Source: Octopus bimaculoides
Taxonomy: Eukaryota
Length of the DNA: 64,000 nucleotides
Direction of reading: 5' to 3'
NCBI RefSeq assembly: GCF_001194135.2
Contig: NC_068985.1
Coordinates: forward strand, 19,676,382 to 19,740,381
The position numbers and the translations under genes are program-made. Below the pieces are notes generated by a model, which was not told the DNA's origin, did no database searches, and saw only the letters and a list, made by a program, of their open reading frames with translations. Shown one piece after another: positions 50,601 through 53,272 of this stretch; the stretch's first letter is position 1; every line of letters begins with the position of its first letter.

Positions 50601-53272
50601 AATGTCTTTTCTATGTGATTTTATAATTTATGCAGTTGGCCGCTACTTATTCCTACTTGACAAATGTTAATTTTGCTTGTATTGTGTTAAGTAACATGCC
50701 TCCAATTTTAGATTTATTGCTAGATTGTTTGTCATCTGAGAAATTAAAGTTATATATTAATCATTGATAGTATATTTTGGAATTTACTCACAGGACTTAC
50801 CATTAATCCTTGTCAGTGGTGTTTCCCGATTCATAGCAACACAGAATGTCATGTTTTTGTTTGGATAATGCAGCCACCTCCTCACTATGAATTTCCAGGA
50901 TTATCTTCTCAGCATTGCAGCCCGTGACTCACCGGATGTTAAAGTTCGGTTTCTCGGACTACTTCTCTACTCCTATCTCTCCCTTGTCAACTGTCCTGAT
51001 GGAGTCATGTCGGAAACCTGCCAGCAAAGAGGGAATGCTTACTCTTAAAACTGCATATGGGACTTTGCTTCCTGCATGCTGAGCTGACAGCTGAAGGGTA
51101 TCTTGTTAGACTTACATAAACATGTACTCGGATATGTGACCGACGCAAATAACAAATGTCTAGCCTCTAGCAGGCTAGCCTTCACCACACACGGCCAGCA
51201 GTTACTGTCTCTTCACTGACAGTTTAATAGTCACCGCACAGTTGTGTTAAACCTTTTCTTGGTTTTACTGTAAACAAAAGCATTCAAGAAGAGAGAGCAA
51301 AGTGCCGATACCAGCCAGATGCATGCTCCCTCTTTCAATTGGTTACTACTAACCTGGACGTTCAGGTGAATTTTTAAGTTGGGGACAGGAAGTAAACACC
51401 CTGGGGTTGCAGGTAAGATGGCAGCAATTAAGGTAAGTTAACTACTTTTCTTACCCAGGGTAAGCTCTTGGCCCTAACTAAAATTTGTTCAAAGTTAAAA
51501 TTGTCAAGCTTGTGGGAGTGTGCATTCTTGTTGGTTTCATAGTATTTCATGAATAGACATAACTGGCTCTTCTGATTTCAGTTAAAAGCAAATAAATCTT
51601 ATTCCTACTAATATTCTGCCTTTCTTCTTGTTATGGGGGTTTTCCCAACAATGCCCTGTAACAATTTTACAGATGTGGATGATATAAAATTTGTGATAAA
51701 CTTTGACTACCCGGCCACCTCAGAAGACTATGTTCACCGTATTGGGCGAACTGCTCGCAGCAACAATACTGGCACTGCGTACACTTTCTTCACTCCTGCT
51801 AATATGAAACAAGCTCAAGACCTTATGTCTGTGCTTAAAGAAGCTAACCAAGTCATCAATCCTAAATTAATGCAATTGGCAGAGAGTGCAAGAGGAATAT
51901 TTGGAAAAGGTAATTCTTTTTTATATTATTACATTGTGCCATGGCCACAATAAAGCATGTTAAGTTATTTTTTTATGCTTCTGTGGTATGGCAGAGAAAA
52001 AAATCTTCTTCGATCTTCCAATTTTTTTTCCGTAGAATTTGGAATTTGCAAGGGAGATACAGTATGTGATTGTCAAAACTTTTTAGTATTTCCTAACGAA
52101 GATGTTTTTGTTATAATTTTAAATTTAAACTGGTTTTGTAAAAATTTTAATGTCAAGTAGGATTTAGAATCTATGGTACAAGGCTTTTTTTAAAAAGATA
52201 TTTTCAGATTTTTAATTTTAAACTGCTATGAAAGTTAGCCATATAAAATAAATGGTGATTGGTATTACTCAAAATGACAATGTCAAACTATATTATTTGG
52301 TTAGCTCCTAAAGTCATGTTATCACCAATGTAATAAGCACAATTTACATGTTTTGAAATGAATAGGTAAATCTGTATGCTTAAGAGCATTTTCATGATTT
52401 TAATTTTCAAAGAAGAGATCTAGTTCCTATATTTTAACTAGTCTTTTACTCGTATGTGTTTTTTTTTGCTCATTTAAATACCTTCATATTTTATTTATCC
52501 TTTTTCTTCTCCAGGACGCAGTCGCTACCGAGGTGGCAGGGATAGAGATAATGGAAGTGGTGGCCGCTTTGGATCTAGTGGCAGCCGTGGTGATCGTGGA
52601 GGTGGTTCTCGTGGGAGCAGCTATGGTAGTGGCCGTGATCGTGGAGGTGGTTCTCGTGGAGGTTATGGTGGGTCTTCAGGTTCAGGAAACTATGGAGCTG
52701 GTAGTCAGTCCAGAGGATCGTTTGGATCTAAGCCAGGTGGTAGTTCTGAAAGAAATAGATTTTCAGCTAACTCTGGTAACTTTAACCAAAATAATGTAGG
52801 AAGTTATGGCACTAATGTAGGGAACAAGACCGGTGGTTATGGAATGCATTCAAAGCCTAATTATAATACTGGTAGTAATGTGGGTCCTAAATCTAATTAT
52901 CCATCTCAGAATTCCAGTTATCCTACAGCAAATAGTTCAAACTATGGCACCCAGAATAGTTCACGGCCTGTACAAGCACCCGGACAGTATGGGTCTCAAA
53001 AACCCCAGAACTCCTATCAGATGAATGGTTATGGCGGTGCCCCAGCACCTCCAACACAGTCAACTAGTTCTAATCAACAAAATGGTAATGCAACTAGTGG
53101 GGCTGGTACACAGAATTTGCAAAACTTACAGAATATGGCTTTCATGTACAGTCAGTGGATGCAAAATCAGCCGGGTGGTAACTCTCAGCAACAGCCCCCT
53201 CCTCCACCTCCTGGAAAAACAACCAATCCGCCACCTCCACCATCTACCAACTATAATTATCAGTATCGTTAA
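38626..53272 (+). CDS. DDX5: DEAD-box RNA helicase DDX5/DDX17 family (p68/p72; Rm62/Dbp2 orthologue), 13 coding exons, 746 aa
   Basis: Exons 38626-38675, 44025-44214, 44382-44478, 44578-44711, 46230-46295, 46420-46561, 47729-47889, 47988-48160, 48265-48375, 49071-49132, 49248-49307, 51673-51909, 52515-53272 sum to 2241 nt in one open frame with GT-AG introns. Motifs: Q (GFANPTPIQ), I (ARTGSGKT), Ia (PTRELAQQ), II (DEAD), III (SAT), V (ATDVASRGL), VI (HRIGRTAR). Family-specific strings [43 protein letters not shown]5 versus DDX17 cannot be resolved; the C-terminal polyproline is DDX17-like. Confidence 0.97.
41553..41673. mobile_element. Decayed hAT-type MITE in DDX5 intron 1
   Basis: aaagtgcggcccgcggg ... 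gtggccccc ... aaggtttcccatgcct, the same type as 1804-1945; no TSD. Confidence 0.4.
44025..44214 (+). CDS. DDX5: DDX5/17 exon 2
   Basis: Acceptor tttatttcag|; [16 protein letters not shown]...[29 protein letters not shown]; donor GTATGT. Confidence 0.95.
44382..44478 (+). CDS. DDX5: DDX5/17 exon 3 (97 nt)
   Basis: [32 protein letters not shown]; ttccag| ... |GTAAGC. Confidence 0.95.
44578..44711 (+). CDS. DDX5: DDX5/17 exon 4 (Q motif, Walker A; 134 nt)
   Basis: [35 protein letters not shown]; ttgtag| ... |GTAAGT. Confidence 0.97.
46230..46295 (+). CDS. DDX5: DDX5/17 exon 5 (66 nt)
   Basis: [22 protein letters not shown]; poly-T acceptor, donor GTAAGT. Confidence 0.97.
46420..46561 (+). 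CDS. DDX5: DDX5/17 exon 6 (motif Ia; 142 nt)
   Basis: [47 protein letters not shown]; donor GTTAGT. Confidence 0.97.
47729..47889 (+). CDS. DDX5: DDX5/17 exon 7 (DEAD box; 161 nt)
   Basis: [53 protein letters not shown]; donor GTAAGT. Confidence 0.97.
47988..48160 (+). CDS. DDX5: DDX5/17 exon 8 (SAT; 173 nt)
   Basis: [57 protein letters not shown]; donor GTGAGT. Confidence 0.97.
48265..48375 (+). CDS. DDX5: DDX5/17 exon 9 (111 nt)
   Basis: [36 protein letters not shown]; donor GTAAGT. Confidence 0.97.
49071..49132 (+). CDS. DDX5: DDX5/17 exon 10 (62 nt)
   Basis: [20 protein letters not shown]; ccttcag| ... |GTGAGT. Confidence 0.96.
49248..49307 (+). CDS. DDX5: DDX5/17 exon 11 (motif V; 60 nt)
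   Basis: [19 protein letters not shown]; ttttacag| ... |GTTTGT. Confidence 0.96.
51673..51909 (+). CDS. DDX5: DDX5/17 exon 12 (motif VI; 237 nt)
   Basis: [79 protein letters not shown]; donor GTAATT. Confidence 0.96.
52515..53272 (+). CDS. DDX5: DDX5/17 exon 13: RGG/G-S region, N/Q/S/Y-rich low-complexity tail, polyproline, stop
   Basis: Acceptor ttttcttctccag|. Phase 1 gives [14 protein letters not shown]..., in frame with ORF 52844-53272 ending [14 protein letters not shown]. Confidence 0.9.

What the first reader, a model, noticed from the sequence alone, without database searches (positions are those of the whole stretch)
51347..51465. Candidate poison micro-exon / splice-decoy cluster inside DDX5 intron 11
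Seen: a perfect branch-point/SF1-QKI motif TACTAAC (51347-51353) precedes an AG at 51364-51365. That AG is directly followed by GT (TTCAG|GTGAAT, a ratchet-like site). Three consensus donors follow within 100 nt: CAG|GTAAGA (51413), AAG|GTAAGT (51433) and AGG|GTAAGC (51460). Exons of 47, 67 or 94 nt starting at 51366 all create a stop after exon 11 (phase 1). The 47-nt form reads [20 protein letters not shown], with the stop 222 nt before the last junction. The 67-nt form reads ...R-CG*. The 94-nt form has an internal TAA. Three TGCATG (RBFOX) motifs lie in the intron (49560, 51073, 51320). Known: stops more than 50 nt upstream of the last junction trigger NMD, and RNA-binding proteins often autoregulate this way. 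Inference: an unannotated negative-feedback switch for DDX5/17 in this lineage. The polypyrimidine tract before the AG is weak.
Basis: partly seen in the sequence, partly recalled or inferred. Interest (0 to 1): 0.85.

Follow-up and report, generated by a model that had tools for sequence, protein, structure and literature searches.

The report
Conserved splice-decoy module in DDX5 intron
The splice-site cluster is real and lies inside an intron segment of a DDX5-type RNA helicase gene that has been conserved since before molluscs and vertebrates split, and that most likely lets the gene throttle its own output through unproductive splicing.

Summary
The cluster is not chance. It is the only trio of strong donors within 60 nt in the 64 kb window. 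It lies in a 1,065-nt stretch that is 98.4% identical to a related species, where neutral intron sequence is about 76% identical.

Six short islands recur in the same order and spacing in the orthologous intron of a chiton. They include GTTCAG|GT and AAG|GTAAGT. Two of them (51318-51331 and 51512-51526) are complementary. They are predicted to form a stem that encloses the candidate exon and donors. Both arms also occur in fish DDX5 and amphioxus, with one compensatory change.

The host intron is the position-conserved DBP2/p68 intron. Published work links that intron to retention and autoregulation in yeast, plants and mammals. The host intron's own donor is weak (TAG|GTTTGT), and that weak form is also conserved.

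The negative-feedback idea is therefore plausible but not lineage-specific. The TACTAAC and RBFOX details are not supported. No transcript data could be reached, so use of the exon remains untested.

The parts
49248..49307 (+). Exon 11 of the DDX5/DDX17 orthologue (...[20 protein letters not shown]), ending in phase 1
   Evidence: Gene model of ten exons translating without stops; tblastn against Mercenaria DDX5
49305..49313 (+). Authentic 5' splice site of intron 11, TAG|GTTTGT. It is the weakest donor of the ten mapped (3.2 against 5.5-12.3 on my scale).
   Evidence: The same TAG|GTTTGT is found in species A, Mercenaria and amphioxus, and TAG|GTTCGT in the chiton
49308..51672 (+). Intron 11 (2365 nt), the longest of the nine mapped introns. 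It splits the Asp codon after ..SRGL (G|AT).
   Evidence: Same position and phase in chiton, Mercenaria, Babylonia, amphioxus, fish DDX5 and fish DDX17
49553..50206 (+). Conserved block 1, 96.6% identical to species A against about 76% for the flanks. No match was detected in the chiton. Function not resolved.
50608..51672 (+). Conserved block 2, 98.4% identical to species A (17 differences in 1065 nt). It is contiguous with exon 12 and contains everything listed below.
51001..51022 (+). Island 1, GGAGTCATGTCGGAAACCTGCC. 21 of 22 bases are identical in the chiton at a similar distance from exon 12 (672 vs 693 nt). Role unknown.
51058..51069 (+). Island 2, TGGGACTTTGCT. Identical in the chiton (615 vs 640 nt from exon 12). 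Role unknown.
51318..51331 (+). Island 3, the 5' arm of the closing helix (GATGCATGCTCCCT).
   Evidence: Identical in the chiton; AUGCAUACUCCU in fish DDX5; GUGCAUACGCCC in amphioxus. Pairs with 51512-51526 in the MFE and centroid folds
51347..51353 (+). TACTAAC branch-point-like heptamer. The branch A lies 13 nt before the AG.
   Evidence: At chance frequency in the window. The chiton has TTGCTAGG at the aligned place
51360..51367 (+). Island 4, GTTCAG|GT: candidate 3' splice site directly followed by GT
   Evidence: The same octamer is in the chiton at 323 nt vs 313 nt from exon 12
51366..51459 (+). Candidate stop-introducing cassette exon(s) of 47, 67 or 94 nt (ending at 51412, 51432 or 51459)
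   Evidence: Translations. The chiton equivalents are 79 and 99 nt, both with an in-frame TAG. No transcript evidence.
51410..51465 (+). Cluster of three consensus 5' splice sites (GT at 51413, 51433, 51460; 11.3, 11.8 and 10.0 on my scale)
   Evidence: The chiton has AAG|GTAAGT and AAG|GTGTGT at 238 and 218 nt from exon 12, against 240 and 213 here
51368..51486 (+). Stable inner stem-loop domain. Donor 1 sits in a 10-nt loop. Donor 2 pairs with ACUUUUCUUA, which resembles the 5' end of U1. The GU of donor 3 pairs in the CCCUGGG/CCCAGGG helix.
   Evidence: z -3.4 with 0 of 200 shuffles as stable. It is the only outlier among 54 sliding windows. The single difference from species A (51423 A>G) turns U-A into U-G
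51512..51526 (+). Island 6, the 3' arm of the closing helix (GTGGGAGTGTGCATT)
   Evidence: GGAGTGTGCAT occurs once in the 64 kb. It is also in the orthologous intron of species A and B, chiton, fish DDX5 and amphioxus. Folds
51673..51909 (+). Exon 12 ([14 protein letters not shown]...GIFGK). Only 2 differences from species A in 237 nt.

Best explanation
The cluster is the core of an ancient RNA-level regulatory module in the position-conserved DBP2/p68 (DDX5/DDX17) intron.

Shown by the sequence:
- The intron's own splice sites are weak, and the weak donor is conserved.
- About 300 to 210 nt upstream of exon 12 lie a conserved AG|GT and one to three consensus 5' splice sites. Any exon spliced between them introduces a premature stop.
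- This segment is bracketed by two conserved complementary islands. They are predicted to close it into a domain of about 180 nt.
- In this species the inner domain is itself unusually stable, and it base-pairs two of the three donors.

Inferred mechanism:
- While the structure is closed, the internal sites are hidden. Intron 11 is then removed whole and productive mRNA results.
- When the structure is opened, the internal sites are exposed. The most attractive opener is the DDX5 helicase itself, because DEAD-box proteins unwind short duplexes locally.
- U1 then engages the internal donors. The outcome is either inclusion of a stop-carrying exon followed by NMD, or a stalled decoy complex followed by intron retention and nuclear decay. 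Both lower DDX5 output, which gives negative feedback.

The polarity (closed means productive) and the identity of the opener are inference.
For: Constraint:
- Block 50608-51672 is 98.4% identical to species A, against about 76% for neighbouring intron sequence. There are perfect runs of 168 and 268 nt.
- The last 170 nt are also conserved in the more distant species B, whose next intron cannot be aligned to the window.

Deep homology:
- L003 encodes a protein 97-100% identical, exon by exon, to Liolophura sinensis DDX5, so it is a chiton.
- Its orthologous intron shares four exact matches of at least 12 nt with this intron, all collinear. The background rate in the rest of the window predicts 0.2.
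- Six islands keep their order and their distance to exon 12: 672/693, 615/640, 355/367, 313/323, 243/241 and 163/161 nt.

Helix:
- The arms pair in the MFE and centroid folds of the window (z -5.3), chiton, fish DDX5 (z -3.5) and amphioxus.
- 50 of 52 cells pair, against 27-62% when the partners are slid. There is one compensatory C-G to U-A change and three one-sided compatible changes.
- The 11-mer GGAGTGTGCAT lies in the orthologous intron of fish DDX5 and amphioxus.

Splice logic:
- All candidate exons give stops in the window and in the chiton.
- The authentic donor TAG|GTTTGT is the weakest in the gene and is shared with Mercenaria and amphioxus.
- Strong internal donors, often in tandem, recur in this intron in chiton, Babylonia, amphioxus, fish DDX5 and fish DDX17.

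Literature:
- The S. pombe dbp2 intron at the conserved position is poorly spliced and promotes decay (PMC4695336).
- p68 appears to control its own and p72 expression through an intron-mediated step (PMC1920232).
- Plant DRH1, a DDX5 homologue, autoregulates through a hairpin that hides an alternative splice site. This gives stop-carrying cassette-exon, alternative-3'ss and retention isoforms, and it needs helicase activity (bioRxiv 10.64898/2026.01.23.701338).
- Human DDX5 introns are conserved and retained (PMC4737145, PMC5737842).
- Human DDX17 has a validated poison exon (PMC12894984).
Against: - No transcript evidence of any kind. A composite search with the junction peptides and all intron ORFs found nothing, and the collection appears to hold no proteins of this species or its close relatives.
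- The candidate acceptor has a weak pyrimidine tract, and the branch A lies only 13 nt from the AG.
- Covariation is thin: one compensatory pair among four distinct sequences. The shuffle control is uninformative.
- Half of the arm complementarity follows automatically from the palindromic AUGCAU shared by both arms.
- The stable inner fold is not reproduced in the chiton (z +0.7).
- Mercenaria and Babylonia lack the islands, and Mercenaria has no strong internal donor in the 3' part of the intron.
- In amphioxus the helix lies upstream of the internal donors rather than around them.
- PMC5737842 states that the conserved DDX5 intron in mouse has no poison cassette exon.
- My splice-site scores come from an approximate matrix written from memory, not from a trained model.
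Confidence: 0.55

Rival explanations
1. One reading: a lineage-specific poison micro-exon that starts at 51366, uses the TACTAAC branch point and is tuned by RBFOX through the three TGCATG motifs.
For: All motifs are present and all three exons give stops. The TGCATG at 51320 is conserved in the chiton.
Against: - The module is shared with a chiton and, in part, with chordates, so it is not lineage-specific.
- TACTAAC is at chance frequency and is not conserved.
- The other two TGCATG motifs are not in islands shared with the chiton, and TGCATG occurs 28 times in the window.
- Fish and amphioxus have UGCAUA in the same arm, and the downstream arm reads GCAUU or GCAUC. Neither is a canonical RBFOX site.
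Confidence: 0.1
2. The conserved islands are single-stranded protein-binding sites (for example two UGCAU-type sites flanking a regulated exon), not a helix. The exon or decoy would then be controlled by tissue-specific factors rather than by DDX5 unwinding.
For: - Both arms contain UGCAU, and the palindromic AUGCAU alone explains half of the complementarity.
- Islands 1 and 2 are conserved with no obvious pairing partner.
- Covariation evidence is one pair only.
Against: - The non-palindromic half (GCUCCC/GGGAGU) is also complementary, and it carries the one compensatory change, in fish.
- The helix appears in the MFE and centroid folds in four lineages, although the loops differ from 81 to 196 nt.
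- In the window and in fish the stem extends outward through sequences that are not alike.
Confidence: 0.15
3. The structured domain is a processed non-coding RNA, such as a Drosha/Microprocessor substrate or miRNA precursor. DDX5 is a Microprocessor cofactor and the vertebrate intron hosts a miRNA. On this reading the splice-site-like motifs are incidental.
For: - The fish orthologous intron ends in a mir-3064 hairpin (60.9 bits, E 3.6e-13).
- The window domain folds far better than shuffles (z -3.4 and -5.3).
Against: - No Rfam family matches the window intron at E up to 1.
- The fold is a branched 119-nt domain inside a long-range stem, not a hairpin of about 35 bp.
- mir-3064 sits at the very 3' end of the fish intron, at a different place from the helix.
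- The AG|GT and GTAAGT motifs are themselves among the conserved islands.
Confidence: 0.07
4. The constraint acts at the DNA level (an intronic enhancer) or reflects RNA-editing duplexes of the kind the first reader's cephalopod assignment would suggest. Splicing control would not be involved.
For: Between the window and species A the whole 1,065 nt is conserved, together with exon 12 synonymous sites. That is far more than the roughly 90 nt shared with the chiton. Something beyond the islands is therefore constrained in this lineage.
Against: - The conserved features are strand-specific RNA signals: splice-site consensus sequences and complementary arms with G-U pairs.
- They are also conserved in a chiton, a fish and amphioxus.
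- No long duplex between exon 12 and the intron was found.
- Sliding-window folding shows no excess structure elsewhere in the blocks.
Confidence: 0.06
5. A chance cluster of splice-like motifs in a neutrally evolving intron.
For: Individual motifs (TACTAAC, TGCATG, single GTAAG sites) occur at background frequency.
Against: - 168 and 72 nt perfect runs against a species whose neutral intron sequence is about 24% diverged.
- Collinear islands shared with a chiton.
- The only donor trio of its kind in 64 kb.
Confidence: 0.01

Closest known systems
Yeast DBP2 / S. pombe dbp2 conserved intron (Barta & Iggo 1995; Kilchert et al. 2015, PMC4695336)
   Same: Same gene family. By the papers' statement the intron is at a conserved position and is unusually long. 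It is poorly spliced and lowers mRNA output. In S. cerevisiae, retention is relieved in a helicase-dead mutant, which points to autoregulation.
   Different: The yeast mechanism is retention plus nuclear exosome decay (Mmi1 sites in S. pombe). No internal cassette exon or closing helix has been described. I could not align yeast sequence here. Identity of position and phase with yeast rests on the papers and on my recollection of the DBP2 gene structure.
Vertebrate DDX5/DDX17 conserved retained intron, mir-3064, and the DDX17 poison exon (PMC1920232, PMC4737145, PMC5737842, PMC12894984; Moore et al. 2011, not readable here)
   Same: - Same intron position and phase in fish DDX5 and DDX17.
- The fish DDX5 intron carries mir-3064 at its 3' end, which I take to mark it as the vertebrate miRNA-hosting DDX5 intron described by Moore et al. 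2011.
- Fish DDX5 has both helix arms around a consensus donor AGG|GTAAGC, 232 nt from exon 12.
- Human DDX5 introns are conserved and retained. p68 appears to control its own and p72 pre-mRNA. Human DDX17 has a poison exon.
   Different: - No mir-3064 match in the window.
- PMC5737842 says the conserved DDX5 intron has no poison cassette exon.
- The location of the human DDX17 poison exon was not available to me.
- Fish DDX17 lacks the arm sequences.
Plant DEAD motif in DRH1/RH46 (bioRxiv 10.64898/2026.01.23.701338)
   Same: The gene is a DDX5 homologue. A long intron holds a structured RNA that overlaps an alternative splice site. The cassette-exon, alternative-3'ss and retention isoforms all carry premature stops. 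Negative autoregulation needs helicase activity. This is the closest working analogy.
   Different: The plant element is a single 19-20 bp hairpin that hides a 3' splice site, and it is confined to land plants. Here a long-range stem encloses about 180 nt with 5' splice sites. No sequence relation was shown, and I do not know whether the plant intron is at the same position.
Ultraconserved poison exons of SR and hnRNP genes (Ni et al. 2007; Lareau et al. 2007, cited in PMC5737842)
   Same: An RNA-processing gene carries an intronic stretch more conserved than synonymous sites. It surrounds a stop-introducing alternative exon, and the expected result is homeostatic feedback.
   Different: Those exons are documented by transcripts and by NMD sensitivity. 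Here inclusion is hypothetical, and several candidate exon ends exist.
Decoy (cryptic) exons that promote intron retention, as described for human erythroblast retained introns (recalled from memory; not read here)
   Same: Unannotated splice-site pairs inside a retained intron of an RNA-processing gene engage the spliceosome without productive splicing.
   Different: That model has no requirement for an enclosing helix, and no conservation of this depth has been reported for it.

Membership tests
Position-conserved DBP2/p68 (DDX5/DDX17) intron | The intron interrupts the Asp codon after ..ARGL/I (between helicase motifs V and VI), in phase 1 | tested here: met
   Window TTA G|AT. Same split in chiton and Mercenaria, Babylonia and amphioxus, and fish DDX5 and DDX17. 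Yeast was not testable with these tools.
Position-conserved DBP2/p68 (DDX5/DDX17) intron | Unusually long compared with neighbouring introns | tested here: met
   Window 2365 nt against 98-1518 nt. Mercenaria 1846 against 0.2-0.3 kb and chiton 1528 against 0.13-0.27 kb. Babylonia 6531 nt and amphioxus 2592 nt. Fish DDX5 1430 nt and fish DDX17 3704 nt.
Position-conserved DBP2/p68 (DDX5/DDX17) intron | Inefficient splicing or retention of the intron in vivo | not testable with these tools
   Indirect only: the weakest donor in the gene (3.2) and a weak acceptor (-0.2). The weak donor is conserved across phyla.
Poison cassette exon (alternative splicing coupled to NMD) | Inclusion introduces a stop more than 50 nt upstream of a downstream exon junction | tested here: met
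   All three window forms do, and so do the 79 and 99-nt chiton forms.
Poison cassette exon (alternative splicing coupled to NMD) | The exon and its splice sites are conserved across species | tested here: met
   GTTCAG|GT and AAG|GTAAGT are conserved in the chiton at matching distances. Exon length is 1 mod 3 in both. The region is identical in species A except for one base.
Poison cassette exon (alternative splicing coupled to NMD) | Spliced transcripts contain the exon and are stabilised when NMD is blocked | not testable with these tools
   No RNA data. The junction-peptide search was empty, and the collection lacks this species.
Structured-RNA helicase sensor (plant DEAD-motif type) | A stable RNA structure overlaps the alternative splice site(s) | tested here: met
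   51354-51490 has z -3.4 and 51305-51540 has z -5.3. Donors 2 and 3 are paired. This is a prediction only.
Structured-RNA helicase sensor (plant DEAD-motif type) | The structure is supported by covariation | tested here: inconclusive
   96% of cells pair, with one compensatory and three one-sided changes in four sequences. Shuffles do not discriminate.
Structured-RNA helicase sensor (plant DEAD-motif type) | Splicing responds to the helicase's own activity | not testable with these tools
   Needs an experiment.
Recursive (ratchet) splice site | A strong pyrimidine tract and AG directly joined to a consensus GTAAGT, inside a very long intron | tested here: not met
   The intron is 2.4 kb, the acceptor scores 0.8, and the regenerated donor is GTGAAT at 8.8.
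[quoted passage not shown] | Match to Rfam RF03840 abutting exon 12 | tested here: not met
   There is no mir-3064 match, and no Rfam match at all, within the window intron at E up to 1. The match is present in fish DDX5.
RBFOX-regulated exon | Conserved (U)GCAUG near the exon | tested here: inconclusive
   UGCAUG at 51320 is conserved in the chiton, but it is UGCAUA in fish and amphioxus and lies in the helix arm. TGCATG is not enriched.

The most novel reading that the evidence does not exclude
A single RNA helix ([A/G]UGCAU[G/A]C.CC[C/U] pairing with [G/A]GGAGUGUGCAU) has been kept in the DDX5 intron since before molluscs and chordates diverged. It acts as a sensor of DDX5 helicase activity that gates a stop-introducing exon or U1 decoy. 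If so, it would be the ancestral bilaterian mechanism behind the DBP2/p68 intron autoregulation first reported in 1995 and never explained at the sequence level.
Probability: 0.3. Interest if true: 0.85.

Novelty: new variant of a known kind. Interest (0 to 1): 0.7.

Why it matters
DDX5/DDX17/Dbp2 helicases act in transcription, splicing, miRNA processing and ribosome biogenesis, and they are dosage-sensitive. Their conserved intron has been linked to autoregulation since the yeast work of 1995, but the papers I could reach define no cis-element for animals.

This analysis yields a short, testable element:
- two complementary arms;
- an AG|GT junction;
- consensus internal donors;
- a deliberately weak authentic donor.

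The element is shared by two mollusc classes and, in part, by amphioxus and a teleost. Intronic sequence conserved across that distance is rare. It parallels the structured-RNA switch just described for the plant homologue, which suggests either a very old mechanism or convergent evolution. It also gives direct mutagenesis targets in any of these animals, including vertebrate DDX5.

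Tried and rejected
- Searching for cephalopod or same-species proteins. The protein collection returned nothing above 82% identity for a 380-aa core query. 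Exact look-ups of window ORFs found nothing.
- A composite 1,831-aa query of all intron ORF fragments plus the hypothetical junction peptides gave no hit at E up to 0.01. No further genomic or transcript contigs could be pulled in that way.
- All species B contigs (L002, L005-L008) break at a poly-T run about 195 nt upstream of exon 12. They therefore do not cover the candidate.
- A metagenome scan for a 31-mer from the candidate gave 0 hits.
- A literature search for the run accessions gave 0 hits, so species A and B remain unnamed.
- Rfam on the window intron gave only a sub-threshold SNORA31-like hit in the next intron.
- Repeat or transposon origin was rejected. Block 2 is single-copy in the window and matches nothing in the other loci except the chiton island.
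- An editing-type duplex with exon 12 was not found. There is no long inverted repeat and no excess folding outside 51350-51499.
- Conservation of the inner fold was not confirmed in the chiton, fish DDX17 or Babylonia.
- Moore 2011, Barta & Iggo 1995, Iggo 1991 and Rössler 2000 are not in the library. Statements about them are second-hand, taken from papers that cite them.

Full report
**1. The observation.** Every motif is at the stated coordinates. I built a ten-exon model of the gene that translates without a stop. Its core protein is 75-80% identical to mollusc, arthropod, amphioxus and vertebrate DDX5/DDX17 proteins by direct comparison, and up to 82% in the database search. Exon 11 is 49248-49307 and ends in phase 1, exon 12 is 51673-51909, and intron 11 is 2365 nt. 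I could not verify the taxon. The collection holds no close protein relatives, so I call the source 'the window species'.

**2. Is it more than chance?** The single motifs are not. TACTAAC occurs 5 times in the window against about 7 expected from composition. TGCATG occurs 28 times. The donor trio is different. With a rough weight matrix written from remembered consensus frequencies, it is the only set of three strong donors within 60 nt on either strand of the 64 kb, which I estimate at P about 0.01. The candidate acceptor is weak (0.8), but the authentic exon 12 acceptor is weaker (-0.2). The authentic intron 11 donor, TAG|GTTTGT, is the weakest of the ten mapped donors (3.2 against 5.5-12.3).

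**3. Constraint in close relatives.** A 7.4-kb genomic contig from a related species (L001, 'species A') aligns across the region.
- Ordinary intron sequence is 68-88% identical. The middle of intron 11 (50207-50607) is about 76% identical.
- Two blocks inside intron 11 are nearly invariant: 49553-50206 at 96.6%, and 50608-51672 at 98.4%, with perfect runs of 277, 268 and 168 nt.
- The candidate lies in the second block and differs at one base only (51423 A>G).
- Exon 12 has only 2 differences in 237 nt, so its synonymous sites are constrained too.
- A more distant species (B; L002, L005, L006) keeps the last 170 nt of the intron, including a perfect 35-mer, while its next intron cannot be aligned. 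Its contigs all break at a poly-T run just short of the candidate.

**4. Deep homology.** L003/L004 encode a protein that is 97-100% identical, exon by exon, to Liolophura sinensis DDX5. They therefore come from a chiton.
- Its exons are only about 77% identical in DNA to the window. Even so, its orthologous intron shares four exact matches of at least 12 nt with intron 11. All are collinear. The background rate in the rest of the window predicts about 0.2.
- Six islands keep their order and their distance to exon 12:

| Island | Sequence | nt from exon 12 (window / chiton) |
|---|---|---|
| 1 | GGAGTCATGTCGGA[A/T]ACCTGCC | 672 / 693 |
| 2 | TGGGACTTTGCT | 615 / 640 |
| 3 | GATGCATGCTCCCT | 355 / 367 |
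| 4 | GTTCAG\|GT | 313 / 323 |
| 5 | AAG\|GTAAGT | 243 / 241 |
| 6 | TGGGAGTGTGCATT | 163 / 161 |

The exon between them is 67 nt here and 79 nt in the chiton. Both lengths are 1 mod 3, and the chiton exon has an in-frame TAG.
- TACTAAC is not conserved; the chiton has TTGCTAGG at the aligned place.
- Donor 1 is not a donor in the chiton (GTCCAC).
- The chiton has a second donor, AAG|GTGTGT, 20 nt after the first.

**5. A closing helix.** Islands 3 and 6 are complementary: GAUGCAUGCUCCC pairs with GGGAGUGUGCAUU.
- In the window the minimum-energy and centroid folds of 51305-51540 pair 51307-51332 with 51512-51538. They enclose about 180 nt that hold the AG|GT and all three donors (z -5.3, 0 of 200 shuffles as stable).
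- The same pairing closes the fold in the chiton.
- The 11-mer GGAGTGTGCAT is unique in the 64 kb. It also lies in the orthologous intron of a teleost DDX5 (L012) and of amphioxus (L011).
- In both of those species an upstream partner pairs with it in the MFE and centroid folds: AUGCAUACUCCU in fish and GUGCAUACGCCC in amphioxus.
- Across the four lineages 50 of 52 cells pair, against 27-62% when the partners are slid. There is one compensatory C-G to U-A change, three one-sided compatible changes and one mismatch.
- Caveats: there are only four distinct sequences. AUGCAU is palindromic, so half of the complementarity would follow from two copies of one motif. In amphioxus the helix lies upstream of the internal donors, not around them. 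Mercenaria, Babylonia and fish DDX17 lack the arms in this intron.

**6. Inner structure.** Among 54 sliding windows across the intron and its flanks, only 51350-51499 folds far better than shuffles (z -3.4).
- Donor 1 sits in a 10-nt loop.
- Donor 2 pairs with ACUUUUCUUA, a sequence like the 5' end of U1.
- The GU of donor 3 lies in the CCCUGGG/CCCAGGG helix.
- The single substitution in species A keeps a pair (U-A to U-G).
- This inner fold is not reproduced in the chiton (z +0.7). It may therefore be a lineage-specific elaboration.
- In Babylonia an internal donor GAG|GUAAGUG pairs with an upstream CACUUAC.

**7. Which intron is this?** The split of the Asp codon after ..SRGL in phase 1 is identical in chiton, Mercenaria, Babylonia, amphioxus, fish DDX5 and fish DDX17. 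In each of them the intron is the longest, or among the longest, in the gene. The fish DDX5 intron ends in a mir-3064 hairpin that abuts exon 12 (60.9 bits, E 3.6e-13). I take this to identify it as the vertebrate 'conserved p68 intron' that hosts a miRNA.

The weak donor TAG|GTTTGT is shared by the window, species A, Mercenaria and amphioxus, with GTTCGT in the chiton. Strong internal donors recur in this intron at these distances from exon 12:
- chiton: 238 and 218 nt;
- Babylonia: 884 and 869 nt;
- amphioxus: 519 and 508 nt;
- fish DDX5: 232 nt;
- fish DDX17: 185 nt.

**8. Literature.**
- The S. pombe dbp2 intron at the conserved position is poorly spliced and promotes decay. The same paper summarises the S. 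cerevisiae autoregulation and the human conserved intron (PMC4695336).
- Knockdown of p68 clears partially spliced p68 and p72 pre-mRNA and raises mature mRNA. The authors read this as intron-mediated control (PMC1920232).
- Human DDX5 introns are retained and conserved (PMC4737145, PMC5737842). The second paper says they hold no poison cassette exon.
- Human DDX17 has a validated poison exon (PMC12894984).
- In plants the DDX5 homologue DRH1 autoregulates through a hairpin that hides an alternative splice site in a long intron. It gives stop-carrying isoforms and depends on helicase activity (bioRxiv 10.64898/2026.01.23.701338).

**9. Interpretation.**
- Shown: a strongly constrained, strand-specific module made of splice-site-like elements that would give premature stops. 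It is bracketed by conserved complementary arms. It lies in an intron with conserved weak splice sites that other work ties to retention and autoregulation.
- Inferred: the structure hides the internal sites. Opening it exposes them, plausibly through DDX5 itself. Use of the sites, by exon inclusion or as a U1 decoy that stalls intron removal, then lowers productive mRNA.
- My confidence that the region is a functional RNA-level regulatory element is about 0.9. For the unproductive-splicing switch as described it is 0.55. For the specific exons starting at 51366 being spliced in, it is about 0.4.
- Rival readings are protein-binding sites without a helix, a processed small RNA, DNA-level or editing-linked constraint, and chance. 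They are weighed in the rival explanations.

**10. Limits.** There are no transcript data. Only two close relatives were available, and one does not cover the candidate. Covariation is thin. The splice scores are approximate. Species A and B are unnamed, and the taxon of the window is unverified. Several key papers could be cited only second-hand.

Noticed in passing
window 49553-50206: A second near-invariant block inside intron 11: 96.6% identical to species A, against about 76% for the flanks. It holds acceptor-like sites at 49623, 49650 and 49979, a strong donor CTG|GTAAGG at 50136, long poly-T runs, and AATAAA at 50060 and 50079. It could be another stop-introducing exon or an intronic polyadenylation site. 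No match was detected in the chiton intron.
   Followed up: partly
window 51943-52064 (+), intron 12: Weak match to the H/ACA snoRNA family SNORA31 (25.6 bits against a gathering score of 40; E 0.096). The region is only about 83-88% identical to species A.
   Followed up: no
L010 (Babylonia areolata) 3973-3992: TTTTGGGAGTGTGCATGCTT, an exact copy of the 3' arm core, lies in a different, upstream intron of the same gene. It sits next to a stretch that looks tRNA- or SINE-like. This may be chance, or a hint that the arm derives from, or was copied by, a mobile element.
   Followed up: partly
L012 (Xiphophorus DDX5) 8910-8984: A mir-3064 hairpin (Rfam RF03840; 60.9 bits, below the gathering score of 76; E 3.6e-13) ends at the intron/exon 12 boundary. 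The helix arms lie 150-250 nt further upstream in the same intron.
   Followed up: yes
window 49305-49313; L009 12424-12432; L011 10288-10296; L003 2521-2529: The authentic donor of this intron is the non-consensus TAG|GTTTGT in the window, Mercenaria and amphioxus, and TAG|GTTCGT in the chiton. A weak splice site has been conserved across phyla.
   Followed up: yes
window 51001-51022 and 51058-51069: Islands 1 and 2 are conserved in the chiton but have no assigned role. In the window, island 2 is 81% complementary to 51386-51401, which lies inside the candidate exon (pair I18).
   Followed up: partly
L001 1-438: The start of the species A contig carries a second, 88% identical copy of the exon 12 region (window 51504-51913), joined to upstream gene sequence. 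This is probably an assembly chimera or a second haplotype or paralogue.
   Followed up: no
window, whole: The window holds about 3 kb of N runs (for example 9691-10432, 21421-21892, 59608-60526) and several families of short interspersed repeats (for example 227-396, 3923-4318, 19030-19416). None of them overlaps intron 11.
   Followed up: no
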